From Phallusia mammillata (taxonomy: Eukaryota), in the NCBI GenBank assembly GCA_965637545.1, contig OZ281498.1:8556001-8620000 (forward strand): 64,000 bases of DNA, read 5' to 3'. A program made the position numbers and the translations under genes. The notes below the pieces were generated by a model, which ran no database searches, was not told the DNA's origin, and saw only the letters and a list, made by a program, of their open reading frames with translations. Below, piece after piece: positions 12,501-63,397 of the stretch. Position 1 is the stretch's first letter. Each line of letters starts with the position of its first letter.

Positions 12501-14279
12501 ATGCAGACAAGCGGTTATGGCCACTCAAATATAATGAAAGCACACTAGGCTTATTCAAGGCGTAAACCAAATTACATCCTAAAGCCTCGCGTGATTTACT
12601 AAAGAGTTATATAGACCTATAATTATTTTCCCAAAGGAGCTAAAATGACCTTTGCCTAATATTTGGACATTTTCAGCGTACATTTTTCTCGTCAGGTTCT
12701 AACAGTAATAAAATTGCAAATTCAGTGACTCATAGACAAAAATATACGAAATGTAAAAGTTTGGGAGTTATTGAAAAAATACATCAACTTACTAAGGTAA
12801 ATGGTGTCGCGGGCATCATACTTGGATAGTTTGACTGTTGTGCATAAGTATGTATCATCCTGCAAACAAAATGTAAACATAACAAACAGCCTACAGTCTT
12901 GCCATATGGGAATGCTTGAGAGACCGGCTCGATTCGGTATATTGACTTCAATAGGCCTTGTGGTATGATTTATGCACTCAGTCACTTACATAAAAGTAAC
13001 AGTAAGAAGCAGTTAGAAAGGCTAACATTTGTCCTGTACGTTTTGTAAGAAATCAGAGGAAGTTATCAGGGGAACAAAATACACAGCTCTAGTTATTTTA
13101 TAACCCGCGTTTACAAGATTGTTCTGTACTGTCCCAACAAAATCTGTGCTACCAATGGAAAGTTTTATTTTAAAACTCACGTGACTGATGTTGACTGCAG
13201 GCATGCGAATGTTGATGTTGAAACGGTTACTACTTCCTGATTGACTCTTTGACGAGCTGTAAACCAAAATGTGTAATGTGTAATGATTAAAAAAATAATA
13301 AGCTGCAGACCGTGCACACTGTTTCGACCTATAAGGTCTCATCAGTACAACTGGTGACGAGAGATCGGTCGTATTAGCTAGTGTAGGCATCCAACGGCAC
13401 TCCAGTTTGTAAGGAGTAACAGGGTAAAAACCCATGCATAACCTATTCTGTGCGATGCCACCATACACCACAGAGGAAACTGGCTCACAATGACCAAGCA
13501 ACTGCTAGGTCGGAACAGTATGCACTGTCTGCAGTTATCGTTTATTGACTCGATGCTTTTACATTCAAAGAATAATGTAAAAGAAAAACCGTGGACCGCA
13601 ACTATACTACAATAAAGAAACAAAATGTAGCACTCACACAGTGTCTGTAGAGTCACTGCGTACTTTTAAGTCATCATCATCATAATCTTCATCTAAATCG
13701 AATGAATCTGCATTTCCTTTGTCACCATCATATTCGATTAAATCCGGTTCCTCGATAAAATCAAAGCCGTATTCTTGTTCGTCTGAACATTTGTTTGGTT
13801 AAAAAATGGTCCATAAACTTTCGTTTTTTTAATATAAATTTAGTTATAAAAGTGTAGTTTGTGTTGAAAATCAAACCCAAAAGTAGTTTTGCAATGATAA
13901 ACTGTTTTTAGAACTAAAAATCATTAAAAATTGTGGAATGATTGAAAACTAACATCTTCAGTAGGCATTTTTCCACAAATATTAACACAAACGGTCTAAC
14001 CCAGTTGGTCTCAACCTGGGACCTTTCAGGGGTCCATTGTCGATGAAAAATTGAGAACCACTGGCTAACCTCTTACTACAAATTAGAATAACAAACGAAT
14101 AAATGATTATTACCTCTTTCGCCATCGGATGCTTCTATGGGGCCAAACAGATAATCCAAATCATTTTCAAAGTTTTGCAAAGTTTCAAATTCGTCCAAAT
14201 CGGTATCAATATGACCTTCGCAAAACGCTATCAACACAATACAAACTACCAAGCACGCCAAACTCCTATTGTGTGTCAT
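9546..14279 (-). CDS. PHM: Peptidylglycine alpha-hydroxylating monooxygenase, monofunctional (no PAL domain), 428 aa
   Basis: Nine phase-consistent exons: 14114-14279, 13638-13782, 13181-13256, 12793-12859, 12127-12217, 11183-11391, 10686-10824, 10094-10283, 9546-9749. Signal peptide. Copper ligands present: AHHMLL, LQVHF, RTHAH, DEMCNFY. Stop about 40 aa after the Met ligand. Confidence 0.93.
13290..13563 (-). mobile_element. Hammerhead-bearing palindromic element, family H1 (Penelope/retrozyme-like), copy A
   Basis: Shares the core GGGTTTTTACCC...ACTCC..ACAAACTGGAGTGCCGTTG..TG.CTACAC...CCGATCTCTCGTCACCAG with copies at 22248 and 46203. Full hammerhead at the left end on the minus strand; inverted partial copy plus tail GATGCTTTTACA at the right end. 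Confidence 0.85.
13301..13352 (-). ncRNA. Type I hammerhead ribozyme, intact catalytic core, sense to PHM intron 2
   Basis: Minus strand reads AGTTGTA-CTGATGA-GACC TTATA GGTC-GAAAC AGTGTGCACG GTC-TGCAGCT. Stem I is 7 bp (2 G-U), stem II 4 bp, stem III has one mismatch, and the GUC triplet predicts cleavage between 13308 and 13307. Confidence 0.88.
14002..14063. mobile_element. 62-bp minimal hAT (Charlie-like) MITE
   Basis: Termini CAGTTGGTCTCAACCT / AATTGAGAACCACTG resemble the element at 14935. Degenerate TSD GTCTAACC / G-CTAACC. Confidence 0.6.
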
Positions 14280-14429
14280 CTTAATATTTAAACGATATAC
14301 GTTAGCACACTGCAAGCTCCAACATGTACGAAAAGGATTATGCACATTTTACGTAGGCACACTTTGATTTCCTCCTTGAGGAACAGACTGCCTACTACTG
14401 TTACACAATCGATTATGTTTTTTTTTTCG

Positions 14430-14810
14430 AACCATATGTTGTTGCCTTGCATATTTATGTCAAGCTACATCGTTTCTCAATAGTTTCTCACCGTTAAACT
14501 CTTTACTCAAATTGTCCAAAGCTTTCTTGGCATGTAGTTTATGAATTATCTGTCTTTTGTAATGCTTGATTATATCGTGAACAACCTATTGTTTAAGCGA
14601 ATTCCCCATATTTTCCGTCGCAGAAGTATTTCTTTAAACTGCCCAAAACCTTTTTCGCATGTAGTTATCAATTCTGTGTCTAACGAGTATGCTTTTGTAA
14701 TGATTGCTTATATATTGAGCAACATATTGTTTAAGCAAATTCCTAAAAATACTTTCGTCGCAGAAGTACGTATTTCTTAAAACTGTCCAAAACTTTTTAC
14801 ACAGACCATC
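14430..14810. repeat. Degenerate tandem repeat, unit about 140-150 bp, upstream of PHM
   Basis: Recurring CTTTTGTAATG..TT..TTATAT....GAACAAC.TATTGTTTAAGC.AATTCC...TTCGTCGCAGAAGTA...AAACTG.CCAAAAC blocks at about 14555 and 14695, with a partial third copy. Confidence 0.7.
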
Positions 14811-14934
14811 CATCCTATATCAAAAGCATATGCTATTGCAATCCTTACTTGTACTAACCAATATACAGAACGTTGTTAAAGCGAGTTTCCTGATTCTTTT
14901 ACGCAGCAAAGGTTATTACTCAAACTGTCTAAAT

Positions 14935-15387
14935 CAGTGTTTCTCAACCTGGGGGTCGCGACCCCCCAAGGGGTCGCCAAGCAATTTTGAGGGGTCGCGG
15001 AGACGTAACCGAACACGGAATACTTTATCTGTATCATAAAAACTTTCCCTATGACTTTTGTTTAGCATGTAGTAACTCACACGACCGTTTGATTTAGAAC
15101 GGGCGTAACATTATTTGCGATTGTATACTTCTATAATTGCGGGTTTTGGTTTTTCTTAACATAAAAAAAACACGAAATAGTGAAATAGTTAGTGAAAAAT
15201 AGGGGTTTTCCGGAATACAGCAAAACGCCGAACTATTGCAGCCACGTTAAGATTGCAAATGTGTGATGAACACAATCAACACATGCTGGTAGTTAAACTT
15301 CTTGTGTGTGTGCGTATGTATAGGGGTCGCGTGGTGTTAGAAAATCTCTAAAGGGGGTCGCATAGTAAAAAAGGTTGAGAACCACTG
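14935..15387. mobile_element. hAT-Charlie-like MITE, 453 bp
   Basis: TIRs CAGTGTTTCTCAACCT / AGGTTGAGAACCACTG, subterminal GGGGTCGC repeats, perfect 8-bp TSD GTCTAAAT (14927-14934 and 15388-15395). Confidence 0.9.
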
Positions 15388-16269
15388 GTCTAAATCCTTT
15401 CACACAGTTTATGTATCTGGTGTCTTCGACGTATCCTGTTAAAATACCAGTTCTTAGAACCATAAGCAAGATATATCGCTAAAGCTCTAACACTTTTCTG
15501 TCCCAAGAAACTTTGCCTATACAGCCAAACAATTATTAAGATCCAAAGCACATGTTGCTGTAATACTCTAAATACGTTTGGAATAATGTACCTCCAAAAA
15601 AAGATTACTATAAAAAAATTGTAATGCGAATATTTTTTTAATTGTTTGATGGTCATGGCTAACAAAAGAAAAGTCCTTGGCCAAAAGGGTGGTGCCCTTC
15701 GTTTTTGCTGATCGTAACCTTTTCATCAAACTGTCTCCTGGCCTTCTCAAAAGCTAGTGGAAACTATACTTGTGGTACAAATTTGCCAAAATGCATTAAA
15801 ACTGATGGCAACGTTTGTGTTAACTGCGTATCTCGTAAGTTTAAAATACCAATCTATTAGCGAATTAATTTCATACATAAAACAGTCAGCAAAAATTAAG
15901 CGTACACGCTGTTTCTATGCCATGGACTATACCCCAAAACAGCTGCGAATAGTTTATTCACATCACGTCTTACCCTATGGCGTACTGCAGATATTAAGCA
16001 GAAACCCAAACGCCACCCAATTAACGCCGTTGGTAAACACTTCCATACGCCCCAACTGGTTTACAATGCAAGGAAGCAATAGATTGGCGTCTTTTCTTTC
16101 GCTTTTCAGTCGCTCAATGCGTCAACGCTATGGAGGTTTTCGATATTGATTTCAAGAATAGTTTTAGCACTCGCATTCATTTGCTCGGGGATAAACAGTT
16201 AAAGAAATAAATGGGTGATTTTTTTCACTTGTCTAACTGTTATCTATGCCGGATGTGCAAGCTTGGGTC

Positions 16270-20500: not shown

Positions 20501-23500
20501 TGTGCTTTACCAACTGACCTACACATGGTCAAATAAAGGTTATACTCGTTGCATTGTATGAAAAACAAGAGTTCACATTAAGCCTAAGTTCCCAATAGGA
20601 AACTATTAAACACTTATTTTCTATAGCGAGTTTCGTTAAAATTACGCATCTTTTACAAAAATCTATTGTAATAAACGATTGCCTTATTTGTTACTTGTTT
20701 TTTGTTGGAATTTTTAAACTAATAAGGATTTTTCTTTAAAAAAACAATTACGTGTCATCGTGCCCAAAACACAAAAAAAACCTTTTCAGCAATTATTTGA
20801 ATGTACGCATATAACGTATTTGATATTTGAAAGCATACAACCTGGACCACTGTCGTTTAACTTACCGACTATTGCCGTGGTGTTGGATGTTTCACTAAAC
20901 ACAGGCTGATAGACAGCAGCAAGCCACATGGTAAAAGCAATCTGAAAAAAATACAGTTTTAATTAAGCAGTTGGGAGCATATTTTCATTGAATTCAGCGT
21001 TGTTAATCAGCTTGGAAAGGAGATTATGTTTTGCAAGGGAAAATTCTAAAGCAAATAAGCTACTTTTTTATAACTATTAATCAGAATAGCATTTCAATGC
21101 CAATATAAAAACTGTGCTAAAAATCGTCCTACACCAACGGACTCTTAATTATTACAGGCAATTCCAGTTGGGGATAATATATGCTAAACTGAAGCTTTAT
21201 ATATCACATTGCATAACGAAAAACACAGACTGATCTAAGTGTACTGAAAGCTTCAGTTTAGTATATATATAAATATATATTAAAAGGTTACAGTTTTAAT
21301 TAAACAGTTGGTAGTAAACTTTCATTGAATTTAGCGTTGAGGTGTTTGGCAAAAATAAAAATATAACAACACGAATATAGATTCTGGAAAAAAACATTAG
21401 AATAAAAAAACGGAAAGATATTTTTTTACTTACAATAAATATCATAACGATAACGCCAAATTTAATAAGATCATTCAGAAGACCTTCAATGATTATGGTC
21501 CACGGTCCGAATAAATAATGAAAACTAAAAACAAAATGTGTTGATTATCTCAGCGTAACATTATAACAGAACAGGACCCAGAAAGCTATGTCATTATGTT
21601 ACAAAGATTTCAATCTACGTTAAGTTAAAGGTGAATTGTGGGATTAGAGTCGCAATTTCAAGTAATTGTGTGTTTTTTTGCTCTTAGGTTATGAAAGCCG
21701 GCTATAATATTACAGTTTTGTCTTTTGTTAGCCTAATATTTGTAAAGCAAGCGAAAGTTTCAGCTATACACCAAAGGGCCTCATTTTAATTTTCTACCTT
21801 GTTGAAATTAATAAGAAATTTTTCCTTATAATTTAGTATGTAAAATGTGTGGTGTATATTATAAAATCAGGAGTCACCAGAGACTCAGTACGAGAAATGG
21901 AGACAACACTCGCATACAATAACAGGCTGAAAATTCTAATTTTGCATTTTTTACAGTTTGGAATAAAGAAAAAAAAAACTTACAGGCGCTTACCTTAAAA
22001 ATTCAAGAAATTGCACAAAAGCGAAGGTCATGGCCGCGGAAAGAAATATATTTCGCACATAAATGATTTGCAATCTCACTTCCAGATTGCTAAAGGGAAA
22101 ACCAATCGCAATGATATGAACCACTATCGCCATGGCACATAGCACCAACACAATCGTTCGTATCTGCAGAATAGAGAAAACTGTCTCAAAATGGCCAAGC
22201 AACCACTTGGGAACCAAAGTGATGTCGGCTCAGTGTCACAGTATCAATGTAAAAGAATCGAGTCAATAAATGATAAGCTGCAGACAGTGCACACGGCTTT
22301 TAAGCCTGTTACTCCCTACAAACTGAAGTGCCGTTGGATGGCTACACTATCCAACATGGCCAATCTCTCGTCACCAGCTGCACTGATGAGACCTTATAGG
22401 TCGAGTTTAAAAAAAAAAAAAAAAAAAACAGTGTGCATTGTCTGCAGCTTATCATTTTTTGGCGCGATGCTTTTACAAAGGCGATTCAATTTTCTCACAG
22501 TAGTACAAATTAATTTGCCAACGAGAACATGTAAAAAAGGGTATTTTCAAAAAATATCTCAATCGCATTTTGCCAAGAATGCCGTAACACAAAGAAGGTC
22601 AAACAAAAGCTTTTACTTTAACAAAATGGAAAACTTACCCTGGCTATCCCAGTTCGTCCTCCAGGTCCAGTTATTTCGTTGACCAACACACCGGACATCC
22701 AAACTAGTAGAAGCCATTCGTTCCATTCTGGTATTAAATCACCTTGATTATAGATCGGAGTAATTGGAATAGCTACTGTCGCCACAAACAGTCCCACCTT
22801 TAGATAAAAACAAATGCTGTAAATGTATAGGTACCCCATGTAGTAAAATATTGACAATATCTGGTAAAAGTTTCATTTAAAATAGGGAAAAGATATAATC
22901 GTGTTTAATGTTAAAAAATTTTGTAAAACTAGTTTTTATGTTGGGATATCCACCCAATTGGTCAGGGAATTTTATAAACTAGAAGATCTTTTACAAAACA
23001 AAAACTTTCCTATTTATTGCAAAAAAAACTGGTACACGGTTTCAGTTTAATGACACACCGTAAAGCCAGTAGAATGAAAAAAAATTTAAGCGGAGGCTAA
23101 AACAACCAAAGATGCGGTGAGTTTTGAACTAAATACCCTAGTTTTTTCGCATTCAATGTCCTTCTCACCATGTAAAAGTGGCTGACGAGAGAAACGATGA
23201 ACTTTATGATGGGAATTCGGCTCAAACGGACGTGAAAGGGAAGAGCAAGAAAGAGCCAAAGAGGAGGAAAAAAGACAATTGCGAAAAAGAGAAGAGCAAA
23301 TTTCCAGTCAGCCCAGTTCAAGTTGCCAACCTGCAACATAATGTCAAGTCACGAATAGTCGTGAAATTAACAAGCTGCCCAGAAACACAATCAACCGATG
23401 TTAAAGCGTGAAAATATATACAGAAACTTGGATGCATTAATGTATTAGTAAGCTGCAAATAGTAAAAACTGTCTTGTCACCAGCTGTACTGATGAGACCT

Positions 23501-26500
23501 TATAAGTGATAAAGTGTACACCAGGGCTGTCAAACAAGTTGCACGCAGAGCATTTGAAAATGGCACTCGAGCTTTGCAAACATTCAAATGGTAAATGTTA
23601 TAGGATTTGTCACGCAACCATCATTTTGGCGATTTTCTTGAGTTTAATAAACAATTTTACTTGCATTTGACGACATAAGATTTATTTGACAATTCCTAAG
23701 GTTCTACATGACCAAAATTCGCACGGCGGTTTTCGAGTTGGACACCACTAGTGTACACTGCCTGTAGCTTACTTATCAATTAATGGCTTTAATTTTTTTT
23801 TACTCATATAGTAACATTAAGCAGACACCAATTACAAAGGCCAAGCAGTTGCTGTAGTTTATAGCCAGTTGTGGCATCGAACAGATTTGGTGGGGCGTTG
23901 TTTTTTAGCCTGGTAATACCAACAAACGAACTTGGCAACCTACGGGTCTCATCAGTGTGCACTGTCTGCAGCTTATTGCAAGTATATACTTGGTCAAATT
24001 AAAAAGCCAGTAATTTTGGGCTATTAATGTTTTTAACTTCAGTTGACTACATTTTAATTCTTACCCAGACATCGGACAAATATTTTTGAACTGCGGGATG
24101 CGCAATCACATTTTTCTGCTCACAGTCGATTAAAACGTCGAGGAATGGAGTCGATTTGCGGTCGGTTGCTTTTAGGATGTCGTTTGCACCGTTGTTGGCG
24201 CTGTAGAGCACAAATTGTTATATCTATGGCACATTTACTTGTATGTTTTAATGCAAGGTTGTTACGATTTAATGTATCTGCTTTTCCATTTTTTTATTTA
24301 TTGTATCAATTTATTTAGGATGGTAATAAATATTTTCAGACATTTTTAAAAAAATGGACGGTATGCACATTGTTAATGCAATACTATTGGTTGCATTTGT
24401 GGGCTAAATGGCCAAAATCAATATGACCTCTAAAAAAAACTTCATGGTATTGGTAATTTTTGGTCGTGTCAAAAAATGTCTTGTATACACTTGTCAATGT
24501 AATATAATAGGGTGCATTGTGGGCAAAATGTCATCATCAAAATGACCTCTAAAATAACAAAAAAATCAGAAACTCTTTAATAGACCTTTCTTAGGATTTA
24601 GTACCAGGTTGGTAAAAACTGATCAAACACTCCTTTATGAAAACAAACCTGCATATTTCCAGCAAATCCACCGCTAAATTCTCGCAATAGTTTGAACATT
24701 CCACAAGATTTTTTGCTTGCTCTTTTTCCCGGTTACTGGAAATCATAAAAGCCCGGGACAATTTGGCAGCAGTATCAATTGGAGCAGCTGAAGCAAGGAC
24801 AAATTCTTCCAAGATGTCCATGTTCTTCGTCTGGGCCTCTTCAGCAGTCATAGGGGTCCTTGCTCTGGATGACCCACCCATGGCACTCTGTGGTCTGGCC
24901 TTTTTGGCTGGAGATTTAGCGACCAGCATAAGATCACAGACGAATGATTTTTCGTTGATTAACTTGGAAGTGTCGTGGTCGCATTTGAGTAGGAAACTTA
25001 CAACATTCTACAATCATAAATCAATTGTAAATGTTGACCAGTATTGGAAAGAAATTGATTTATGTGCAAGCTTTAGTAAGTTGGAATAAGGTAAAATTTT
25101 TAAAGACAGATTTTCTCACGACACACTCAACTGAACTTCTGCTAAACCAGTATAGGCCTTTTTTGCAATAAAGGGTCTGTTTATCCCCAAAAAATAGTTT
25201 TCCTATGTGTCAGCGCAGGTAATTGTCATATATTAATGTTACAGTATCAGACAATATTCTGCCAGTACTTTGTTTTAAGGTGCACAGTGTCAAGTCTTTT
25301 GATTAATTTTTGCTAAACTACAAGAAATTAAAACAAATTTTCAAGTCGCTTGCCTTAATTAGTTGCCTAACTCGAAATTGTAATGCTGCATTATTTGTAT
25401 CTGCACACACGCCTTTTTCAGCTGACATAATGCGCTATGGTGACAGCGTTTAAAAAATGTCTTCATATCCAACAAACGTTGAAGAAAGTCTTTTGAACAC
25501 TTACGTAATGTCGTGACGATGCAGCAAACTGAATTGGAATTCTCTTGTCCTGTTTAGTTTCGTGTTTCGTCGAAGCTCCAGTCTCACTTAATAGTTTCAC
25601 CATCTTCAATGAGCCGGACTTGGCAGCAAGATGCAAAGGCGTCAAACCGTTCTAAATCAATAGTAAACCATTAAATTCAAAGTCCACAGTACACCATCTA
25701 GAAGAGGCGTTATTTCGAATCAAACCAGTCTCCCATGTATTTCCTTATGCAGCAGACAGATAAAAAATATTTATCTAACGGTGGGATTCGAATCCACGAA
25801 AGGAGCCTTTTAAGGGCTGGCGTTCAAGCAAATGAGCGGAATTGTTTATGTCAGTTGAATATTGTACCACATACATTATTGCCTTTTGCGTATGCTGGAT
25901 ATGTTTGTAAAGTTGTTTCACGACGACAAGCTATGTTTGCAGTGCTTATTTTACGGTTTATCTGTGATATATCTGGATTTAAACAGAAAGCAAAGCAAAA
26001 ATGGGAGACACACAACCTTTTCGACTACGCTTTTCCAGTAGTATATATGAGCCTTAAAGAAAGGTAATAGCCAACACTAACCTTAAAAAAAACAAGAATT
26101 TTGTTCATATGTTTTGCAACATGACAGGGAAATACAAACTATTGAAAATTTAGTTTTCAAAATAAATTTTTTACTGACCTTATCTGGCACATCAATATCA
26201 GCGCCTTGTCCTATGAGCAGAGCCGCCATCTCCAAGTGGCCGTAAGCAGCAGCATAATGCAAACAAGTAAATCCCTTTGCGTCAACGCATTTCAACTGGG
26301 AAATTGATTTGCTGAGGAGAAGACCCACTACATCTACGTAACCACTGTTGGCCGCTAGATGGAGTGGTGTTGCTTTCTAAAATTATAGATCAGGTTTTAT
26401 GAAAAATGAGGGCGGGAACTTGGCCGAATGGTCCGGCGCACCTGACCCACACACAGACATAAAAAAAACTGATTAAATTCGCATCTGGAAGTGTCATGGA

Positions 26501-31790: not shown

Positions 31791-31822
<32 letters not shown>

Positions 31823-34800: not shown

Positions 34801-37800
34801 AAACATACAACGCCCAGTTATAGGAACACTGATACATAAGTACGTGTTTCAAATTGGGCTTCGCTACTTTAAAATATTTTTTTATAAGTATGATGGTATT
34901 GCATGATAACAAAGTTGCAGACAGAACACAATGTCACTTTACCAGCCTACGGTCAATGTCTCATCACCAGCTGCACTGATAAGACCTTATCGGTTGAAAC
35001 AGTGTACACTGTCTGCATATTTGTTTTTTAAAGGTCCCTTTAATAGTGCCCATCTTCTAACGTTAAATGTGTGTATTTAGGGACTCACCTTTGTGCGACG
35101 AAGAACTGATTTCGGAAATTTCTCAGCTAGTTGTTCTACTACTGCTGTGTGACCTGCAAAGTTAAATTGTTGGATTACTTAACAGTACGCATCGTTAACC
35201 CGACGTTAGACGTTCAAAGTCATTATTTCGTTTTGTACACAACAGTCAAGCATTTTCTCCATTATTCACATTTTAAATTGCCAAAATATTTCACTGCAAT
35301 ATGAAAATAGAGCTGAAACTCTCCCCTGTAATATTATGGACCAATGACAAAAACAGGAGCAGAAATAGCCACTTAGTTAAAAACATGCATGTGAGTATGC
35401 TTGTTTGCTGTAGCATTAAGTATCTATTCTGGGTATAGCGCGTTCAGGTGTTGGCACCGTTCGACGAATGGGAACAAAATAAACAACGTTGATCATTTGA
35501 CATTAAACCAGGGCTGTCAGATTCATTTTCGTGCGGGGGGGCATAATCACCTACTAGTTTTTACGCCAGGCAGAATTGGTAGCAGTCACTTTTTAGTACA
35601 CACGATATTTGTAATGTTTCAAGTACAATAAGCGTAAATTGACGAAGTATAGACCCAGTACCGGCAATTTTAGAAAAGCAAAAAGTTTCTAACCGTTACA
35701 GAAACGAAAAACACGGCACCGACAGCAAAATATAAGAGCATGGGCCGATTTTGACCCACAGGTCGCCAGTTTGACACCCCTGCTGTAAATGACTTGCAGA
35801 CTAAATACAACCTAAAGCCGTTGATGGAAACGCAGTGTGTGGTAAACGATGGTGGAAAGTCAAACAATTCACAAACAGCTTTCCCATTTATCACCCGTCT
35901 GTCGTAAAGCTCTTATTTAGTCAACATTAAATGTCGTAATCTGATCAAATTCGCGCCTACATGTTACGGGTGATTAAAATTATGGGTAAGCATTGTGGGG
36001 GGTTTCTATAAACTGATGGCAATGCAATTAAATTTACAATTTTAAGCAGATTTTTGCTTTAAAGTGGGTCTTATTAAAGTTATGTTTATGCGCACAGCTT
36101 CGCCGATACGGTGTTTTTTGTTTGTTACTCTATAAGTATTCAATTGTTGGTTTATTTTTAATTTTGCAAAGCTTATTTAAACCTTTAATTTAAACGTTTT
36201 TACAAAACCATTGTCATAATCAAAAACAAAACTGTGGGAGAGCTTGTATGAAATAGTTTTTTCCAGGCGTGTCTCAAAAAAAGCTAGAGCGACATTGCCC
36301 CAAACCAATGGAATCAGAATGGTTCAACAAAATTGTAACCAACTTCGTAAAAACATAAAAAAATCAACGGACAAGCAATATAGCAGGTAGATCGAAGGTA
36401 TAAAGCATTTAAGCGTTGCCCACCCACAAGGATAAAAAACAAGCACAGTACGTTTTTATGGTAACCCTACCATGTAATTGAAATTTGTACCTTTAACCGC
36501 AGCAATGTGTAGAGCAGTTCGTTCCAAATGATCAACAAGGTCAGGATTTGCTTTATGTGCGTACAGACACTCGATAATTAGGCTGTCACCCATCGAAGCA
36601 GCAACGTGAAGAGCTGTGGTCCCCTCTTTCTAGACACAAGATACATTTCGCTTGGTTACAACAAGAAATACAAATGGTTTGTTATAATCTTAACTGTGCT
36701 GTTAAACGGACGTTGATTTTGGTCATGACTTGTATAAATGAAATCAGCTAATTTGTCGTTCATGTTTAATTTCTTCAAAAAGCTTTAAGAAACGACCCGA
36801 CGATCCCCTACTACGAAGCTGTCATATGTGCAGCATACGAGGCAGGAAATGGTGCTTGTAATGCGACTTTCGACGTGTTCTCCACTGAGCCTGTGTAGCT
36901 CAGTTGGTAGAGCGCGAGTTCCGGAAAGGCTCCTGTCGTATGCTCGAATCTCACCGCAAGCCAATTTTTTCTATCCTACGCCTTGCCAAATGAAAATGCT
37001 GGGTGACCGGGTGACCGGGTGATTCGGTCAACAGGTCTAGGGTACTGTGATTTACATATGAGTGTGCCGTGAACGCTGGTCTTCATAAACGCTTCAGGGC
37101 CGGTCCCAGGTCTAAATTTACGTTATTCAGTTTAAGTAGAGACTTACGTTATTCAGTTTAAGTAGAGAATTTGGGTAGACGCTCTCACACTTTTATTAAC
37201 CAAACCTCTTACGTTTTGAACATTGACGAGGGATCCCTTCTTGCAGAAGAGTCGAACCATTTCAGCGTCTCTTCTCTCGCACGCCATATGCAGCACAGTG
37301 TTGCCTGTCACCGGATTCTGGTATCTCAGTTGTTCCTCGGCATACTGACTCAACAAATCCCGGTATGCACCTTGGTTGTTCGCCTCAATGGCATAAAACA
37401 GTGGAATCTTTCCATTCTGTGCAATGTTTGAGTAAAGGTTGCTATGGTTCAAAAACACGAGACAACGTTTTTTAAAGTAGCTTGATAAAACATATCAAGA
37501 AAACAGCATTTTTTTCATTGCTGGTGCTTTTTAGTAAGTGCCACAAGAAATTTGAGAAGCAATGCATTAGAACTTTAGCTCAAAGTGTGTCGGTAGACCT
37601 AGTAACATAAGAACTCACAACAGACAAAGTTGACTTAACCGATGAATGGCGTAAAAAGCAGAGTTATTTGACATTGAGCCTGGGATAGGGTTAGGAACTG
37701 AATCTAACGTTATGTATTAAGTTTAGGGATTAGGTTTGTTATTTTTATCAAGGAACTTTACCTCAACCCTTATCGTCAGCATTTTCACACAATTTGAATA

Positions 37801-40800
37801 TTCGCAAATGCTCTTTACGCAATCTGTTAGTATTTAGGAAACTTTGTCTGTTGTGAGTTTTTATGTTAGTAACCTCTACCGAAAGGGTCACAAAGCTTTT
37901 TGCATTGAGTTCAAATACTAAAACTGTACTGTCTTTGTAGTGGTAAACAAATTGATCGTACATTCGAAAATGGACAAACAAACACTAAAGTGGCTTACAC
38001 CTCGCTGTTGCGCACCTTTTTATCTATCGGTTTTATGCGACGTTTGTTTCGTACCTGACTTATCATTATTTCACAGTGTATATAAATGGGTGTAACTGAT
38101 GTGGCCCGGTATGTTACTGGTGATGGCATGAGCATTTGTCAAATCGTTTGAAAAATAACGCATGTCGTTTTTTAAGTCTATTTGGGCCGTTGTTTTCATC
38201 ATTAAACACTAAAGTATATTCAAACAAATGTGACCTTTTTAACAAACATTTATTCGATGACACCGCCTCCAGATTAATAGTCAAATCATTTTTCCCGTAA
38301 CCCACTCACAAAAAAACAGCCTAGGCCTTTAAAGCTTCAGCAAACAACGACAAGGCAACGACTAATCCCTTGATGCTAGACTTGCCCGAAATGCAGACCA
38401 CAAAGCAAATCCACTGATCCTTCATTTCTGACTCGGGAATTACTTATTACGTCTCTGTGGCGCCGTTCCTACAGCTGATATGTCAAATTTCTCGCACCCC
38501 TGTAGGTGGCTTCAATGTACACTCTAATACAATCACATTGGCTGCTTATTTTGAAACATTTGCTTGGCATGGGTGACAACAGTGTAAAGGGTATTCAAAT
38601 GTTTTGCACTAAGATGTCATAAAACAGGGTTGTGCAACCCGCGGCCCTTTGGCAAATGTTTTAAGGCCCGTATAGACGTTTGGATTTTAAACGAATGTGG
38701 TATTTTAACTATTTTAGTGCAGAACTAGCGAGGGATTTGAAATCTTCGTTTGTTTTTGAGCAGATCAATGTAGGTCCGGTGCTTTTTGTAAGTCTTAACA
38801 TGCGAAAAAAATATAAAATATCAGAAATATATCAGAAAAAATACTCTATCTTTGACGAGAACATATCTCTCGTCACCAGCTGCACTGACGAAACCTTTAT
38901 AGGTCGAAACAGTGTGCACTGTCTGCAGCTTATCATTTATTGGGTTGATGCTTTTACATAAAAATACTACATCTGAATAAGGTATTAAAAGTGACTCAAA
39001 CATGTAATTAAAATCTGTTTTTTGACTAATTTTGCGAACCTTGACTATAATCAAATTTTTATCCAGTGTTCAGTTTCCTAAAATGACTGAAGATGCAATA
39101 CGAAACATGTTTGATGCGTTTGCGTGCATTAAATACTTATTATGAAGATTTGAAACCACCAATAGGAGAAGCAAATTTGATCACGTGACAACAAGATTTT
39201 CTGACGTGGCAATTAAATTATAGTAACAGCTAGATAGAGATTCAAATTTGTTTGATTTGGAAAATAACAAATCAATAACAAAACACTTATGTGTCGAACA
39301 ATCAATTTTAAATGAATGTTACCCATTCCAGGCGATGCTGTTTGAATTATTTAAGGTTTAAATGAAATTGGAATGCTATTTTTGAAATACATTTGACATA
39401 CTTTATCTTGTCACAGGTCTCTGTTTCGCTTTTTTGTTTATAAACCTTTACAACGTAACATTTATGGTAAATGCTATGTCGTTTTGTTTTAACTTGATTC
39501 AACTAAAACTTAACAGAATAGAGAACATGCGATCCCCTATACTACGAAGCTGACAAAGTGCAGCATACAAGGTAGGCAAGGTAAGGTTCCTCGTGGGTTC
39601 ATTTCACCGCAAGAAAAATGTTTTTAGCCTATACCTTGCCATATGAATGCCTTGAAGACCGACTTGATTCGTAATGACACCTTTATTATGCCTTAAGGCC
39701 TAATTAGGTCTGGCGTATTATGAAAAGTAAAAAGAGATTTGATGTCGCAGCACTTACCCCGTCTGGTTCGATTCTCAGTATTTTAGGCGTGCTTCTGAGT
39801 AAAGCTTGTGTAACAGCGGCTGAATTATTTCCAGACCTTGCACAAGCCATGTGGAGAGGTAACTGTTGTTTCTCCTGGAAACATAAAGATCTCATAAGAA
39901 TTTTTTTTAGGTAGAAGTGGTTGAAAAACATGACTCTGATTTGTATTGGCTGAAATGATTGGCAAAAGTAATAGTTTGACATTTATATTTAAACGTTGGT
40001 TAGGTTTTATTTAAACATCCAGCAAAATTCTGACAAATACATTTATCTCAAAACAATTGTTCAGTTTATTTCATATGACACATAAAGATTCGAAATGGTG
40101 GGAAGTTATATATTGTATTACAACAGAAATATAACAAATGCTATCCACTAATAATCCAATAGTTTAATTCAGCTTGATTATTTCATACAAATTATCGCGT
40201 ACGAACGCCAGGCAACGATATGGCCGAGTGCCTTAAAACATTCTCGCAAAAAATAGTCACACCTACCCCGCCCTTAAGACTGAGATCAGCTCTCTTCTTG
40301 ATGAGGATGTTGACAATGTCCTCTCTCCCAGTGGCCACAGCAAAATGAATTGCTGCTTGTCCATCCTAGTGCAACATAACACTATGTTAAAAGTTTGCAC
40401 TCTACACAACATGGCCAATTGCGGCAGCTCGAGTTACAACCAAAAAAGCCTTAACATCAAGTTACTTTTTGCTAAGGTTATCTATTTTTGTTAAAGAATA
40501 CAAACAAATCAACAAAATTTCAGCTCTTCCGGCAGTTTTTTTATTCTAATATGCCAACGTTTCGATGTCCCATACGAAACACCTTCATCAGGGTAATGAC
40601 ATAAATTGCAAACACAAGTATTACAAAAACAAATATTGAACTAGAAGGGTGGCTTTCTGATATACTTCCATTTTATATATTCTATACGATATTTACCAAT
40701 TTACTATACACATCATTTGATCTACACATATGATTGTTTTTGTAAACAAAAACTAATGGGTCCCCACACGCGTGTTTGTGCGGATTTACGGTAAACAAAT

Positions 40801-46202: not shown

Positions 46203-46390
46203 TGTAAAAGCATACAGCCAATAAATGATAAGCTGCAGACAGTGGCGTTGTGGCATCTCACAGATTAGGTGAGGCATGGGTTTTTACCCTGTTACCCCAA
46301 GTCCCAACAAACTGGAGTGCCGTTGAATGGCTACACAAGCCAATACGGCCGATCTCTCGTCACTAGCTGCACTGATGAGACCTTATAGGT
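46203..46390 (+). mobile_element. H1 hammerhead element copy F, truncated after stem II
   Basis: Inverted arm TGTAAAAGCATACAGCCAATAAATGATAAGCTGCAGACAGTG, the longest view of the core, then AGCTGCA-CTGATGA-GACCTTATAGGT; GAAAC is missing. Confidence 0.85.
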
Positions 46391-58900: not shown

Positions 58901-61900
58901 CTTATACCGTGATAATACATTTCCACTCTCAATGTGTTATTAAGTTGATCAATGTCTCGACAAGATGCACCTGTTTTCATATTGTGTGTCATTACCGCAA
59001 CTTTGTAAAGAATTTTTTTAAACTTTAAATATTTGTACACTCAAACGCAGGTACAATTTGAAACATTCCGAAAATTTGTCGCACAAAACCTTTTTTTTCA
59101 TTTTCTGGGCAATCATGTTTTTGTATGTTTGCAAACATAACTTCATGAACTTAAAGAAAGTTCCGTTTAGTTTTACTTACACACATATTAATATTTGCAG
59201 GTGCAGACAGATTTTATCGGCACTTAGTTACTTGCATAGCTGTGATCCTGCCATCGTCCATGGTAATCTGACATGTGACACAATATTTATTCAACACAAC
59301 GGCTTGCTCAAAATTGGATCAGGTTTTTATTGTTGTTGTTTTTCAGCATAGCTGTTGTAACATAAAAAAAGCATTATTGTACATTGTAATGTGTTAAAAA
59401 GTCATTTAACATGTTTTAAACATTATCCCTAAAGTAAACTTGTAATATTTCTTAAAAAAGTAAATGTGTCGAAAAAAACTTTTTGGGGGGATTTGTGCAA
59501 AATCGACCTGTTTTTTTCCAAGCAGTGATTTATGGAAGGTTGTTTGTTGTTGCAAATCAGGAGTTAGAAATAGGATGAATTTCCAGGCATGCGCGGTAAT
59601 ATTATTGGACTCCACCATAAACCGGAACAACATGCATCTTCTCACGTATAATACACACGCAACTTGCAGCAACTAATATATAGATCATTTGCAGGCCTTC
59701 ACACCGCAGCTGATAAATCGATTTTCCGTCTTAGTCATCGCACGTTAGGGAATTTACCTAACTTTAGTACGCGCTTCCTTTAATTCAACTAGATACCAGA
59801 TAGAGCGAGAGCTACGAACACAGGAACTCACACGTACAAAAGTTTGCGAAATTTCGGTAGGTGGCGCAAAGAACATTCGCGAACTTTTAAAATCCAATTT
59901 GTGTGAAAAAATGCTGACGGTTAGGGCTAGTAGGGTTGGGCCCACAATAATAATAACAATAAAATCAAATAAAAAAACTAGTTCGTTATGTTAAATTTTG
60001 TCCCCAGCCCCATCCCAGTCTCACTGTGAATATAAAAAATTGCGCTCTTTACGCCATCTTTCAGTATTTAGTAACTTTCCTACAGTCAGTTCCTATGTTA
60101 GTATTTCCCCCATTCAATGGTTGCTTGCGTTTGGTGCAAACCTTTATGTCCTGTATACACGGAAGCGCAGACTTCACTATGCGTTGTGGATTGGATGAAA
60201 AATGACCGTTGCCTGTGTATACTGTAAACCACCTGTCATGTTCTAGTCCAGTCTGCTGATGTCATATTGTTTACGTGCGAACTGCAATATCCGTGGCTGA
60301 CTTGCAATTGTTTAGGTTCATTGCCGTCCAATTTTCTGCCTACGTGCGTTTCAAGGGGCGAAAAATTGCTATGATAAATGGGTTTTCGAGAGGGGTAGTA
60401 TTGACAAATGATATAGTCAGGCTAAAGGTAACGGATTAATAGAGAAATGAAAATTTATTTTTGCAATTTACTAAAAAGTAAACAATTGTTATCTTGCTTT
60501 GTTTGATGAACGAGATAAAATAGGAAAACGCGTTTGTAATATAAAAGGGAAAATATAACCCTTTTATATTACAAACACGTTTTCCTATTTTATCTCGTTC
60601 ATCAACGGTATTTTGTTCCTTTACTCTGAAACAATTTCTTCCATAAAAGCCTGTGTAGCTAAGGCGGTAGAGCGCCAGTCCCGGAAAGACTTCAGTCGTG
60701 GGTTGAAATCCCACCGCAGAATAGTATTTTCTAGCCTACGCCTTTTCATATTTTGTAATCCTGTGTAGACCGATTTGCTTTGATACAACGCTTCCAATCA
60801 GCATATCGTACTTCGAATTAAATATGTGTGAGTCGTACTTGAGGGTCCAAAATTTCTGCAGTGCTTGACATATAAATTAAAGTACCCACGGGGCCCTAGG
60901 TATGCCACTGTCGTGGGTTTGAATCCCATCGCAGGCCTGATTTTTCTACCTTATACCTTACTGTACATAGGAATGCTTGGAAGGCCAGCTCGTACTATGA
61001 TTCTTTGTTAAAAAGTTCCATTTATTTTACAGTTGCACCGGATGCGATTAGAAATCACGTGAAAACTTATTTGGAAATCCACAAAAACTTTCACTACTTT
61101 GCACCAGAATGTACAGGTGGGTCATTTTCTTTACTGTATCGCACACGGTTAGCAGTTATCCCTAGCAAATAAAATCATGTGCTAAACACAGTTTTTGAAA
61201 ATGTGGTTAAAAATGTGTCAACAAAATTTGTGTTTTTTTTTCTTTGTCACCCAATCGACAATTTATTTGTACAATCAAACAAATACTAGAAACACTATAC
61301 ACGTACTTAAAATGAAGTTTAATTAAGATCATACATGCCAAGGAACTTGTCTATATGTAAAATGAATTTTCACACAGACGTTTTAACAAGAATGACAGCG
61401 AATTTTAAAACGTCTGCTTAAAGATGTGTTCCATACGAAAACGTTAGGTTTTGATTAAGCAAATAATCCTTTGTTGATTTTTTTGTTACTTTTAAATTTT
61501 TATCACCAAATTACCATCTGTACTGAACGAAAAATAACTGGAACGTATGTTTTTACAACAGATACAGAAACAGGTAACATCACTCCTGCAGTCGATATAT
61601 ACTCCTTTGGCATTTGTGCATTGGAAATGGCGCTACCCAAAGTTCAATTAGTCGGCGAAAACAAGAAAATAACACCTGCAGATATCGATAGAGCAGTTAA
61701 TATGTTGGACGATACGCAGCAAAGAAACTTCTTGAGGTAATATTTTGGGTTCCTGTGAAACTACAAGTGTTCTGTTCAAATCCGCATTTTAAGCAAATCT
61801 ATATTGTGACAGAGGTACAACGTTTTTTTGTCACATCGTATTTGGTTTAACTCCTTAATCCCAGTGTTTATAAGATCCATTTGATTAGTGATTTATCCGA

Positions 61901-63397
61901 GTATTCTGACCTCTTGACCAGTGTTTTTCAACATTTTTTGAACCACCAAACACTATACGCAATAAAATAATCTTGCGCACACCAAACAAAATTTTATGAT
62001 TATGCAATAAAATAAACAAAAGCTGACACTCAACTACTGTATTTTACTTAAGCAGCAACAGGCCCTCGCTAATACATTTTGAATACTTCACAACCAGTTT
62101 TATTTTTGCACAATAATAAATGAAGCAATTATCGATGAAATTGTTGATAGTGGAAAATTGTTTTCATAAAAGAAAAGCTATTTACGCTCATTATGTTGAC
62201 ACAGTGGTTTTCGACCGGTGTTCTATGAAACACTAGTCAAACTCATCAATTCCTTGCGAAACACCTGACGATCTTTTGCGGAACACCGGTTGAAAACCAA
62301 TAAATTTTGCAAGGGAAACATAAAGGCACTGTTTTTGGTTAGAATCGGAGACTACTTAAATTAAGTGAAGTCGGGCTCCCACATTTTTTGAAAAATTAAG
62401 TCTGTTTCGAATATTTTTACCGACTCCACATGCTCAAATATCTACGTGCATGTTCGCACAAGCAGAGCATATAATAATAAATTATGCCATCATCTTAGGG
62501 GAGCCGAGTTTGTGACTTACGTAAAGCTGGTGCCCTGACTTCATTTAAACCCAAGGGTCACATGTCAGCGGTCACGTTTGTCAATATATTGACGGCGGTT
62601 TACGAAAGTTACGTTCCTGCTATAGTTTCCTCAAAGTTTGACCGATCTATTGACCTTTGTGTTTCGCTATTGCACGAATTATGTTTTTTAAGCGGTTAGA
62701 AATTTGTTATATAGCAGAAACATTTTCGTAACACACCAATAAACGCGGAGTAAGCTGCAGACAGTACACACTGTCTCGACGTAAAAGGCCTCACCAGTAG
62801 TCACACTGCAGTTTGTTAGGAGTAACAGCCTGAATTGGCCACACTAGGCGACACAGCCAATGCCTTGTAACCAGCTGCACTGGCGAGACCTTATAGGTCG
62901 AAACAGTGTGTATTGTCTGTAGCTTATAAACAAAACAAAAATGCAAAACAAATTCGTGGTTTGTGACTGATTTTTTTTCCGAATATGCTTTTCATAGCTA
63001 TAAGCTGCCGTATTCCTGTATTTTTGCAAAAAATAATTTAAAACGTTTGACGGACTGAGTATAGCTGGTTTCCAATAAAAGCTTACTTGACAATATTAGA
63101 CCCTAAAATAGAGCTTATTTGACAAAGTTTAAAATACCAGGGAAGTCGCATTAAAATGGCCTTTGTTGGGGCAACGGCTTTGCTTTGAAACAACGTATTT
63201 GGCAGTTCCAAATTAAAACGGACTAGGCATGACAGATGCTTATCTGCATAAACTAATAAAAATTTCATTTATTAGATTGTGCATATCCAAGGACCCGGCC
63301 GAGCGCCCTTCAGCCCGTGATCTCTTGCTCCACCCAGTGTTGTTCGAAGTCCACTCTCTTAAACTCCTGTCGGCGCACGCATTCGTCAAGCATCAAG
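55970..63397 (+). CDS. NRBP: Nuclear receptor-binding protein (pseudokinase), 5' part; continues beyond the last exon found
   Basis: Exons 55970-56086, 57278-57400, 58064-58174, 58756-58859, 59201-59322, 61033-61116, 61562-61736, 63276-63397. Motifs [110 protein letters not shown]. Confidence 0.95.
56830..57120 (+). mobile_element. tRNA-derived SINE (family S3) with shared tail
   Basis: Head GATGGTGCAGTGGTTAGTGC; tail ATTGTGAGCATAATGCATTCAGTCATTGCCCTCCCACAGAGGATAAA is shared with 28690-28745 and 36410-36445. Confidence 0.6.
57464..57849. mobile_element. hAT MITE, 386 bp
   Basis: TIRs TAGTGATGCACCGAA / TTCGGTGCATCACTA, CCGAA subrepeats, perfect 8-bp TSD GTTTTCAT. Confidence 0.92.
60648..61000 (+). 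mobile_element. Two S1 SINE pieces
   Basis: TGTAGCTAAGGCGGTAGAGCGC...GGGTTGAAATCCCACCGCAG at 60655-60720; second box B plus body at 60908-61000. Confidence 0.7.
62750..62928. mobile_element. H1 element copy G with two inverted, mutated hammerheads
   Basis: Plus strand 62873-62924: AGCTGCA-CTGGCGA-GACCTTATAGGTC-GAAACAGTGTGTATTGTC-TGTAGCT. Minus strand 62753-62800: CTGGTGA-GGCCTTTTACGTC-GAGACAGTGTGTACTGTC-TGCAGCT. Confidence 0.85.

What the first reader, a model, noticed from the sequence alone, without database searches (positions are those of the whole stretch)
13290..62928. Dispersed family of non-coding hammerhead-ribozyme elements (H1) with a built-in inverted anti-ribozyme arm
At least eight related copies (13290, 22248, 23482, 23865, 34912, 38864, 46203, 62750) share a structured core of about 120-150 nt. 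The core ends in a textbook type I hammerhead, AGCTGCA-CTGATGA-GACCTTATAGGTC-GAAAC-AGTGTGCACT-GTC-TGCAGCT, plus a fixed tail ending GATGCTTTTACA. Most copies begin with an inverted duplicate of that 3' end, of variable length (about 10 nt up to a whole second hammerhead), so the RNA could fold into a long rod that masks stems I and III. No ORF, no consistent TSD and no tandem monomers are seen here. Type I hammerheads and inverted terminal copies are known from Penelope-like retroelements, and tandem non-LTR retrozymes give circular RNAs in some animals. A monomeric, palindromic family with a 5-6 bp stem III looks like a distinct non-autonomous, ribozyme-driven parasite. I cannot establish from the sequence alone whether it is already described.
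Basis: partly seen in the sequence, partly recalled or inferred. Interest (0 to 1): 0.92.

Follow-up and report, generated by a model that had tools for sequence, protein, structure and literature searches.

The report
Hammerhead retrozyme copies with Penelope-style insertions
The repeats are real but decayed copies of a small non-coding jumping element that carries a self-cutting hammerhead ribozyme, a kind already described in other animals (retrozymes), and its "inverted arm" is a scar of how it inserts, not a built-in switch.

Summary
All eight window sites belong to one repeat family whose 3' part is a complete type I hammerhead motif followed by a fixed tail.

The reading as a new, monomeric, palindromic parasite does not hold.
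- **Unit and copy number:** genome-wide the unit is a 282-nt non-coding monomer. The 38-nt ribozyme core occurs 326 times exactly and 1062 times with up to 3 mismatches, against 0 in reversed-pattern controls.
- **Tandem copies:** they exist elsewhere, with 160 tail-to-head junctions and arrays of at least 5 units.
- **Flanking repeats:** 17 of 36 insertions have direct repeats of 10-16 nt across their boundaries, against 0 of 36 controls.
- **Inverted arm:** its length and breakpoint vary. Copies sit head to head. One arm ends at position 282 and the other near 254, so a 28-nt tail is present on one side only.
- **Link to Penelope-like elements (PLEs):** this anatomy is published for PLEs. 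A resident PLE fragment pair in this window (18334-18621, 12-bp duplication) shows it too.

PLEs with reverse transcriptase and GIY-YIG endonuclease are abundant here. All 25 sampled PLE 3' ends carry a different, minimal hammerhead and show no similarity to the monomer.

Best reading: a non-LTR retrozyme family, probably moved by PLE enzymes. Earlier follow-ups of this scan reached the same reading on other DNA of this genome. Self-cleavage and circular RNA remain untested.

The parts
13290..13509 (-). Inverted arm, monomer positions 38-263. It holds the best-preserved hammerhead of the window (13297-13356, minus strand).
   Evidence: blastn to the natural monomer, 87% identity; alignment
13506..13563 (+). 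Direct arm, monomer positions 222-282, ending in the full tail GATGCTTTTACA.
22167..22294 (-). Inverted arm made of a partial tandem: monomer 234-282 joined tail-to-head to 1-81 of the next unit.
   Evidence: sequence
22312..22477 (+). Direct arm, monomer positions 137-282. An A-rich insertion of about 23 nt (around 22404-22428) breaks the GAAAC part of the ribozyme core.
23472..23803 (+). One direct copy, monomer positions 191-281, split by about 228 bp of unrelated DNA (23522-23749).
23852..23976 (+). Decayed, rearranged copy: monomer 74-148 and 224-255, with a 13-nt inverted piece at 23945-23957.
34912..34934 (-). Short inverted arm, monomer positions 231-253. Its outer end is of the short class without the tail.
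34948..35017 (+). Direct arm, monomer positions 180-249. The ribozyme core is mutated (CTGATAA).
38865..38958 (+). 5'-truncated single copy, monomer positions 188-282, preceded by an 8-nt inverted piece (38853-38860). It is flanked by the direct repeat AAAAATACT (38837-38845 and 38960-38968). The first pair of helix II is broken (G10.1 to A).
46203..46244 (-). Inverted arm, monomer positions 239-282, with the full tail at the outer end.
46247..46390 (+). Direct arm, monomer positions 90-226, cut off inside helix II of the ribozyme.
62751..62798 (-). Inverted arm, monomer positions 207-254, decayed.
62831..62927 (+). Direct arm, monomer positions 160-255. It has no tail and the core is mutated (CTGGCGA).

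Best explanation
The eight sites are old, mostly disabled insertions of one family of non-LTR retrozyme. This is a 282-nt non-coding retroelement whose 3' part is a canonical type I hammerhead, followed by 37 nt ending in TTTTACA.

**Likely life cycle (inferred from the published class).** Tandem or read-through transcripts cut themselves at GUC (after monomer position 245). The 282-nt RNA is circularised by a host ligase. A retrotransposon reverse transcriptase then copies it at a staggered chromosomal break.

**Shown here.**
- The family, its monomer and its copy number.
- Tandem arrays.
- Flanking duplications of roughly 7-14 bp.
- Frequent 5' truncation.
- A strong excess of head-to-head double insertions, in which one arm ends at position 282 and the other near 254.

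**Inferred.** The enzymes are those of the resident Penelope-like elements (PLEs), because this anatomy is their hallmark and a PLE fragment pair in the same window shows it. The 'inverted anti-ribozyme arm' is therefore a by-product of integration. It would mask the ribozyme if transcribed, but it is not a conserved part of the element.
For: **Family and counts.**
- 1739 first-look candidates genome-wide.
- Exact 38-nt ribozyme core 326 times; up to 3 mismatches 1062 times; reversed-pattern controls 0.

**Monomer and tandems.**
- 282-bp unit, repeated at least 5 times in L005 and as dimers in L006 and L017.
- 160 tail-to-head junctions across the chromosome-scale contigs C1-C8.
- No ORF longer than 53 codons even in a trimer; GC 49%.

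**Ribozyme.**
- CUGAUGA, GAAA and GUC are present, with helices of 7, 5 and 5 bp.
- The 60-nt motif alone takes exactly this three-helix fold as its minimum-energy structure.
- Rfam Hammerhead_1 aligns over its full length (model positions 1-45) with every core position matched.

**Retro-type insertion.**
- Direct repeats of 10-16 nt straddle the boundaries of 17 of 36 insertions, against 0 of 36 shifted controls.

**PLE-type anatomy.**
- Among the first 100 listed exact cores I count 19 head-to-head pairs, 1 tail-to-tail pair and 6 tandem pairs.
- Outer ends fall at position 279-282 in 27 cases and at 249-263 in 20 cases, with the mode at 254.
- Published PLE insertions have an inverted 5'-truncated copy, partial tandems and a tail at one end (PMC8557442).
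- Window 18334-18621 is a head-to-head pair of PLE 3' ends, 98% identical to the L062 family. It has a 12-bp duplication (TTGACGTAACAG) and an extension of about 80 nt on one side.

**PLEs in this genome.**
- 878 first-look candidates, many with open frames of 700-1000 aa.
- Sampled ORFs from PLE loci match RT and GIY-YIG in Pfam. On the one ORF that carries both (L039, 705 aa), both matches fall below Pfam's cut-off.

**Published class.** Non-LTR retrozymes: monomers of about 170-400 nt in tandem, type I hammerhead, coexistence with PLEs (PMC7229834; bioRxiv 10.64898/2026.07.22.740005).
Against: - No Rfam family reaches its gathering score: Hammerhead_1 scores 22.8-23 bits against 34.
- There is no covariation. 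None of the 17 pairs changes on both sides, because the copies are too alike.
- Self-cleavage, transcription and circular RNA are untested.
- No sampled PLE shares sequence with the monomer. All 25 PLE 3' ends carry a minimal hammerhead with a TATATA or ACGT palindrome in place of helix III, and blastn finds no match at E up to 0.01. The homology to PLE terminal repeats reported for Xenopus retrozymes is therefore not seen here.
- The 30 loci used for the anatomy were picked as best matches to a probe that includes the full tail. Each therefore has at least one 282-type end by selection.
- Only 63 of the 878 PLE candidates were scored.
Confidence: 0.8

Rival explanations
1. The copies are simply 5'-truncated 3' ends (pseudo-LTR pieces) of an autonomous Penelope-like element that was not sampled. 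They would not be a separate non-autonomous element.
For: - The anatomy of the insertions is PLE-like.
- Only 63 of 878 PLE candidates were scored, so a PLE clade with this 3' end could have been missed.
- In Xenopus, retrozymes are homologous to PLE terminal repeats.
Against: - The tail is followed directly by the monomer's own 5' end at 160 sites, and whole 282-nt units repeat without any ORF between them.
- None of 25 PLE 3' ends, from about ten sequence groups, resembles the monomer or has its long helix III.
- The one retrozyme copy near a PLE (L033) has its own 11-bp flanking duplication.
Confidence: 0.08
2. It is a SINE moved by a LINE: a polymerase III transcript that borrows a LINE's 3' end.
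For: - It is short, non-coding, dispersed and 5'-truncated, with flanking duplications of variable length.
- Hammerhead-bearing SINE-like elements exist in schistosomes (reviewed in PMC6765202).
Against: - A permissive Rfam scan of a dimer finds no tRNA-, 5S- or 7SL-like head.
- There is no poly(A) or microsatellite tail; the end is a fixed TTTTACA.
- Head-to-head arms with a tail on one side, and tandem units, are not LINE features.
Confidence: 0.06
3. It is a class II element (MITE or foldback), and the hammerhead-like motif merely lies in its terminal inverted repeats.
For: Some copies have both ends formed by the inverted tail: 22248-22477, and L024 with outer ends at positions 279 and 282.
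Against: - The arms are usually unequal (282 against about 254), and inner breakpoints vary from position 1 to 251.
- Many insertions have a single arm.
- Head-to-tail tandem units exist.
- The flanking duplications vary in length.
Confidence: 0.03
4. The inverted arm is a selected anti-ribozyme module that regulates self-cleavage.
For: A transcript through both arms would form a perfect hairpin of about 45 bp: -96.6 kcal/mol, z = -15.6, against -17.9 kcal/mol for the ribozyme fold.
Against: - Arm length and junction differ at every locus.
- Tandem arrays and many single copies lack the arm.
- The same structure arises in PLE insertions that carry a different ribozyme.
Confidence: 0.03

Closest known systems
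Metazoan non-LTR retrozymes (Cervera and de la Pena 2020, PMC7229834)
   Same: - Type I hammerhead in a non-coding monomer of a few hundred nt (282 here, against 170-400 published).
- Tandem dimers to multimers plus dispersed copies.
- GC below 50%.
- Flanking duplications longer than 4 bp.
- Coexistence with PLEs that carry minimal hammerheads.
- The processed monomer is predicted to be highly self-paired (-100.4 kcal/mol, z = -2.6).
   Different: - Helix III has 5 bp with a 4-nt loop. That is longer than the 1-2 bp called usual for metazoan type I hammerheads (PMC4209133).
- The host is said by earlier scan notes to be an ascidian. The searched library holds no paper describing a retrozyme or a PLE-linked hammerhead in a tunicate. 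One genome paper only counts 9 type I hammerhead loci in Didemnum.
- Most copies here are single or head-to-head rather than long arrays.
Penelope-like elements and their pseudo-LTRs (Craig et al. 2021, PMC8557442; Cervera and de la Pena 2014, PMC4209133)
   Same: - Hammerhead a few tens of nt from the 3' end.
- Strong 5' truncation and partial tandems.
- An inverted 5'-truncated copy at the 5' side.
- An extension ('tail') at one end only (28 nt here, 30-40 nt published).
   Different: - No ORF.
- Canonical rather than minimal hammerhead.
- No detectable sequence similarity to 25 sampled resident PLE 3' ends.
Retrozymes derived from PLE terminal repeats in Xenopus (Li, Clavereau and Pollet 2026, bioRxiv 10.64898/2026.07.22.740005)
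   Same: Co-occurrence with PLEs, and a mixture of monomers, dimers and multimers.
   Different: That work rests on sequence homology between retrozymes and PLE terminal repeats, which was tested here and not found. The link here is the anatomy of the insertions, which that text does not describe ('inverted' and 'tail' do not occur in this sense).
Twin priming inversions of LINE-1 (from my own knowledge: Ostertag and Kazazian 2001)
   Same: An inverted 5' segment joined to a direct 3' segment within one pair of flanking duplications. L033 fits this well: inverted 66-258, then direct 251-282.
   Different: In most copies here the two arms overlap widely, with both holding the ribozyme region. 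A single linear monomer cannot be the template for that; a multimeric or circular RNA, or two RNAs, would be needed.

Membership tests
Non-LTR retrozyme | Type I hammerhead with the conserved core (CUGANGA, GAAA, UH cleavage site) and three helices, helix I open | tested here: met
   The consensus reads AGCUGCA-CUGAUGA-GACCU-UAU-AGGUC-GAAA-CAGU-GUGC-ACUG-UC-UGCAGCU. The minimum-energy fold of the 60-nt motif is this junction. Rfam Hammerhead_1 aligns over model positions 1-45.
Non-LTR retrozyme | Monomers of about 170-400 bp in head-to-tail tandem, from dimers to multimers | tested here: met
   282-bp unit; at least 5 units in L005; dimers in L006 and L017; 160 tail-to-head junctions genome-wide.
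Non-LTR retrozyme | Non-coding, with no LTR, primer binding site or polypurine tract | tested here: met
   The longest open frame in a trimer is 53 codons. The unit has no terminal direct repeats. PBS and PPT were not searched for separately.
Non-LTR retrozyme | Flanking duplications longer than 4 bp, where present | tested here: met
   17 of 36 insertions have boundary repeats of 10-16 nt, against 0 of 36 controls.
Non-LTR retrozyme | Self-cleavage and accumulation as small linear and circular RNA | not testable with these tools
   No transcript data and no bench assay were available.
Non-LTR retrozyme | Coexistence with autonomous PLEs that carry minimal hammerheads | tested here: met
   878 first-look PLE candidates, many with open frames. 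Sampled ORFs match RT and GIY-YIG in Pfam. Minimal hammerheads lie in all 25 sampled 3' ends.
PLE-derived retrozyme (homology to a PLE terminal repeat) | Sequence similarity between the monomer and the 3' or terminal repeat of a resident PLE | tested here: not met
   blastn (word size 7, E up to 0.01) of the monomer against the 21 fetched PLE 3' stretches gave no hit. At E up to 0.001 against the six GIY-YIG loci, the only hit was a separate decayed copy in L042. The sample is incomplete.
PLE-type insertion | Inverted 5'-truncated copy, partial tandem and an extension at one end only | tested here: met
   The same anatomy is seen in a resident PLE pair at window 18334-18621.
Rfam RF00163 Hammerhead_1 | Score at or above the curated gathering score (34 bits) | tested here: not met
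   22.8-23 bits; nothing at gathering score in the window or in 15 loci. The loss comes mainly from the 8-nt insertion in helix III.
Structured RNA supported by covariation | Compensatory changes in the helices | tested here: inconclusive
   None of the 17 pairs changes on both sides among 28 distinct rows. The copies are too alike. A pattern search for other CUGAUGAG...CGAAAC...GUC hammerheads returned only mutated copies of this family plus one hit that looks unrelated.
MITE / class II foldback | Equal terminal inverted repeats and a flanking duplication of fixed length | tested here: not met
   The arms are unequal with variable breakpoints, single-arm and tandem copies exist, and the duplications vary in length.
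SINE | tRNA-, 5S- or 7SL-derived head and a LINE-like or A-rich tail | tested here: not met
   A permissive Rfam scan of a dimer gave no such match. The 3' end is a fixed TTTTACA.

The most novel reading that the evidence does not exclude
This family may give the first insertion-level evidence that a retrozyme is moved in trans by Penelope-like enzymes without sharing any 3' sequence or ribozyme type with them. The retrozyme and resident PLE fragments show the same scar: head-to-head 5'-truncated arms, an extension on one side only, and a flanking duplication of about 10-12 bp. None of 25 PLE 3' ends resembles the monomer. If so, the PLE machinery recognises something other than sequence homology, perhaps the hammerhead fold or a short terminal motif such as CTT(TT)ACA. 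That motif recurs near several PLE 3' ends here, but this is a weak lead.
Probability: 0.4. Interest if true: 0.5.

Novelty: new member of a known kind. Interest (0 to 1): 0.3.

Why it matters
It places a hammerhead retrozyme family in a genome that earlier scan notes attribute to an ascidian. The searched literature does not cover that lineage for retrozymes. The family has more than a thousand young copies whose boundaries are still readable.

Those boundaries are the useful part. They show the Penelope-type scar that the literature describes for PLEs but not, in the papers read here, for retrozymes. This makes the proposed PLE dependence directly testable.

For annotation, these sites should be masked as a retroelement. 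They should not be read as regulatory ribozymes of the host genes around them.

Tried and rejected
- **Rfam at gathering score.** The window and 15 loci gave nothing. Only sub-threshold hammerhead hits appeared at permissive settings.
- **Strict in-window hammerhead pattern.** It found one degenerate hit, no better than chance, because the window copies are decayed.
- **Covariation in the family.** None was found.
- **Second canonical hammerhead family.** The search returned only mutated copies of the same family plus one hit that looks unrelated.
- **PLE with the same tail.** Six GIY-YIG loci and 21 further PLE 3' ends were fetched and none matches. The one copy next to a PLE (L033) is an independent insertion with its own duplication.
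- **Arm 5' ends at the ribozyme cut site.** This would have been a footprint of cleaved RNA. The junctions lie between about positions 231 and 252 without a peak at 246, so the idea was dropped.
- **Flanking duplication of the 5-kb palindromic PLE pair in L039.** It was not clear.
- **Organism name.** It was not verified. The window's ORFs gave only LRR and TPR domains, and the tools hide the source of the window's own proteins.
Full report
**1. The observation**

- blastn among them and against a natural full-length unit gives the coordinates listed under 'parts'.
- The shared blocks are far above chance. The 24-nt stretch from GAAAC to TGCAGC occurs 9 times against 0 in shuffles. The tail GATGCTTTTACA occurs 5 times against 0.65.
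The 38-nt stretch from CTGATGA to GTC occurs 326 times exactly in the 240-Mb assembly and 1062 times with up to 3 mismatches, with 0 hits for the reversed pattern.

Inside the window, however, the copies are old (72-93% identity to the unit) and none keeps the ribozyme fully intact.
- The best is 13297-13356 on the minus strand.
- Copies 34976, 38885 and 62880 have changes in the core or in the first pair of helix II.
- Copy 22383 has an A-rich insertion.
- Copy 46372 is cut off.
- The copy at 23472 is split by about 228 bp of foreign DNA.

**2. The element genome-wide**

A search of the window's own assembly gave 1739 first-look candidates. The fetched loci show a complete unit of 282 nt (for example L005:640-921, minus strand).
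- It repeats head to tail at least five times in L005, next to an assembly gap that I left alone.
- It occurs as dimers in L006 and L017.
- The tail-to-head junction occurs 160 times across the chromosome-scale contigs C1-C8, mostly singly, with some runs at 282-bp spacing.
- The unit has no open frame above 53 codons even as a trimer, and 49% GC against about 37% for the window.

So 'monomeric' and 'no tandem' describe this window, not the family. Even here, 22167-22294 holds one tail-to-head junction.

**3. The ribozyme**

The consensus has every conserved core position: CUGAUGA, GAAA and the GUC cleavage triplet after unit position 245. Helix I has 7 bp, helix II has 5 bp with a 3-nt loop, and helix III has 5 bp with a 4-nt loop.
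- The 60-nt motif alone takes exactly this junction as its minimum-energy fold (-17.9 kcal/mol).
- Rfam's Hammerhead_1 model aligns over its full length but scores only 22.8-23 bits against a cut-off of 34, mainly because of 8 extra nt in helix III. Nothing passes at gathering score.
- There is no covariation. Among 28 distinct rows, none of the 17 pairs changes on both sides, because the copies are too alike.
- A pattern search for other hammerheads of this architecture found only mutated copies of the same family plus one hit that looks unrelated.

The case for a ribozyme therefore rests on the complete match to a very well-known motif. It does not rest on comparative or experimental evidence.

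A 5-bp helix III is longer than the 1-2 bp described as usual for animal type I hammerheads (PMC4209133). It should let a single motif fold on its own.

**4. How the copies are built**

I mapped 36 insertions (30 genomic loci, one more locus and the window) to the unit.

- **Flanking repeats.** 17 of the 36 have direct repeats of 10-16 nt straddling their two boundaries, against 0 of 36 when the right flank is taken 200 bp away. By eye the true duplications are about 7-14 bp. Examples are TTTGCGGGATC in L006, TGTTTAACAT in L009, and TTTCATGTTTA in L033. In the window, AAAAATACT flanks 38865-38958.
- **Truncation and double arms.** Most insertions are 5'-truncated and many are double, with two arms whose 5' ends meet in the middle. 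Among the first 100 listed exact ribozyme cores I count 19 head-to-head neighbours, 1 tail-to-tail and 6 tandem.
- **Two classes of outer end.** The outer ends of the arms fall at position 279-282 (27 cases) or at 249-263 with the mode at 254 (20 cases). In double insertions, usually one arm has the last 28 nt and the other lacks them.
- **Variable inner ends.** The inner ends range from position 1 to 251. 15 of 55 lie at 157-169, in a predicted hairpin (TGGCTA-CAC-TAGCCA inside GCCGT...ACGGC).
- **Caveat.** The 30 loci were chosen as best matches to a probe that contains the full tail, so one 282-type end per locus is expected by selection. The partner arms and the window copies are not biased in this way, and they show the short class often.

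**5. The Penelope-like context**

The genome is rich in Penelope-like elements (PLEs).
- A GIY-YIG search and a search with one 705-aa ORF gave 434 and 878 first-look candidates, many with open frames of 700-1000 aa. One tandem run has a 3.3-kb period.
- Sampled ORFs match RT and GIY-YIG in Pfam. On the 705-aa ORF that carries both, both matches fall below Pfam's cut-off.
- All 25 PLE 3' regions I read carry a minimal hammerhead a few hundred nt past the ORF. It consists of CTGAYGA, a short helix II, GAAA, and then a TATATA, TGCA, TTAA, TCGA or ACGT palindrome in place of helix III. This is the kind published for PLEs (PMC4209133).
- None resembles the 282-nt unit.

The anatomy, however, is the same. 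Craig et al. describe PLE insertions as strongly 5'-truncated, in partial tandems, often with an inverted 5'-truncated copy at the 5' side and a 30-40-bp tail at one end only (PMC8557442).

This window holds a clean example from a resident PLE. Positions 18334-18621 are two head-to-head PLE 3' ends (98% identical to the L062 family). They are flanked by the 12-bp repeat TTGACGTAACAG (18322-18333 and 18622-18633), with about 80 extra nt on one arm only. L039 holds a 5-kb palindrome of two PLE copies.

**6. Reading**

The family fits the published non-LTR retrozymes (PMC7229834). These are non-coding monomers of a few hundred nt with a type I hammerhead. They are found in tandem and dispersed, in genomes that also hold PLEs with minimal hammerheads.

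The published model is that multimeric transcripts cut themselves, the monomer is circularised, and a retrotransposon's enzymes copy it back into DNA, with PLEs as the favoured helper.

My data add that the insertions carry the PLE scar, which supports that helper. The arm differs at every locus, so it arises at integration. Because the two arms usually overlap widely, the template was probably a multimer, a circle or two RNAs rather than one linear monomer.

A transcript across both arms would indeed bury the ribozyme in a 45-bp hairpin (-96.6 kcal/mol), but that holds for any inverted duplication.

The steps from transcription to circular RNA, and the identity of the helper, are inferred and not shown.

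**7. Rivals**

- **MITE.** Excluded by unequal arms, variable breakpoints, single-arm and tandem copies, and duplications of variable length.
- **SINE moved by a LINE.** Unlikely, because there is no tRNA, 5S or 7SL head, no A-rich tail, and the scar is wrong for a LINE.
- **Truncated ends of an unsampled PLE.** This remains possible at a low level, because I scored only part of the PLE candidates. The direct tail-to-head junctions without an ORF argue against it.

**8. Known or new**

The kind is known. I found no paper in the searched library that describes a retrozyme or a PLE-linked hammerhead in a tunicate. One Didemnum genome paper only counts 9 type I hammerhead loci.

The papers read here do not describe the head-to-head, one-sided-tail scar for retrozymes. 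The Xenopus preprint that links retrozymes to PLEs does so by sequence homology, which I tested and did not find.

Earlier follow-ups of this scan reached the same overall reading on other stretches of this genome. They name the host as the ascidian Phallusia mammillata, which I could not verify.

The contig is not human.

Noticed in passing
window 18322-18633: The 200-bp 'palindrome of two minimal hammerheads' is a head-to-head pair of 5'-truncated 3' ends of a resident Penelope-like element (98% identical to L062, a copy of this family elsewhere in the genome). It is flanked by the 12-bp duplication TTGACGTAACAG, with about 80 extra nt on the right arm only.
   Followed up: yes
window 19192-19363: Another PLE 3' end with a minimal hammerhead (TATATA in place of helix III). 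It is 91% identical to the 3' region of L057, a PLE copy elsewhere in the genome.
   Followed up: partly
natural monomer L005:640-921 (minus strand), positions 157-169; loci L002-L030: The 5' ends of arms pile up at unit positions 157-169 (15 of 55), inside a predicted hairpin (GCCGT..TGGCTA-CAC-TAGCCA..ACGGC). This could be a stop or switch point for the reverse transcriptase, or the 5' end of a shorter RNA of about 120 nt.
   Followed up: partly
G000:C8:5590164-5602118: Four PLE ORF matches (47% identity to the query, open frames of 942 aa) lie at an exact 3300-bp spacing: a tandem array of whole PLE copies.
   Followed up: no
L039:2404-7391 (G000:C4:7517403-7522390): A 5-kb near-perfect palindrome (97.7% identity) made of two PLE copies head to head. 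One has an open 705-aa frame with weak RT and GIY-YIG matches.
   Followed up: partly
PLE 3' ends in L039, L044, L054, L062; retrozyme tail: Several unrelated PLE families and the retrozyme end in a similar short motif: ...TTCTTACA, ...GGTTTTAC, ...AACTTACA, ...GCTTTTACA. This could be chance in AT-rich sequence, or a shared terminal signal.
   Followed up: no
window 60508-60600: A 93-nt near-perfect hairpin that gives sub-threshold hits to several microRNA models on both strands. It is probably a small foldback repeat rather than a microRNA.
   Followed up: no
window 14929-15393: A 467-bp stretch 96% identical to DNA about 0.9 kb downstream of a PLE ORF on another chromosome (L058). It is another dispersed repeat of unknown kind.
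   Followed up: no
window 36889-36962: A tRNA-like match (29.4 bits, cut-off 29) with mismatched acceptor and T stems. It is probably a tRNA-derived repeat or a pseudogene.
   Followed up: no
window 23522-23749: About 228 bp of unrelated DNA inserted into the ribozyme region of a retrozyme copy: a nested insertion of another small element.
   Followed up: no
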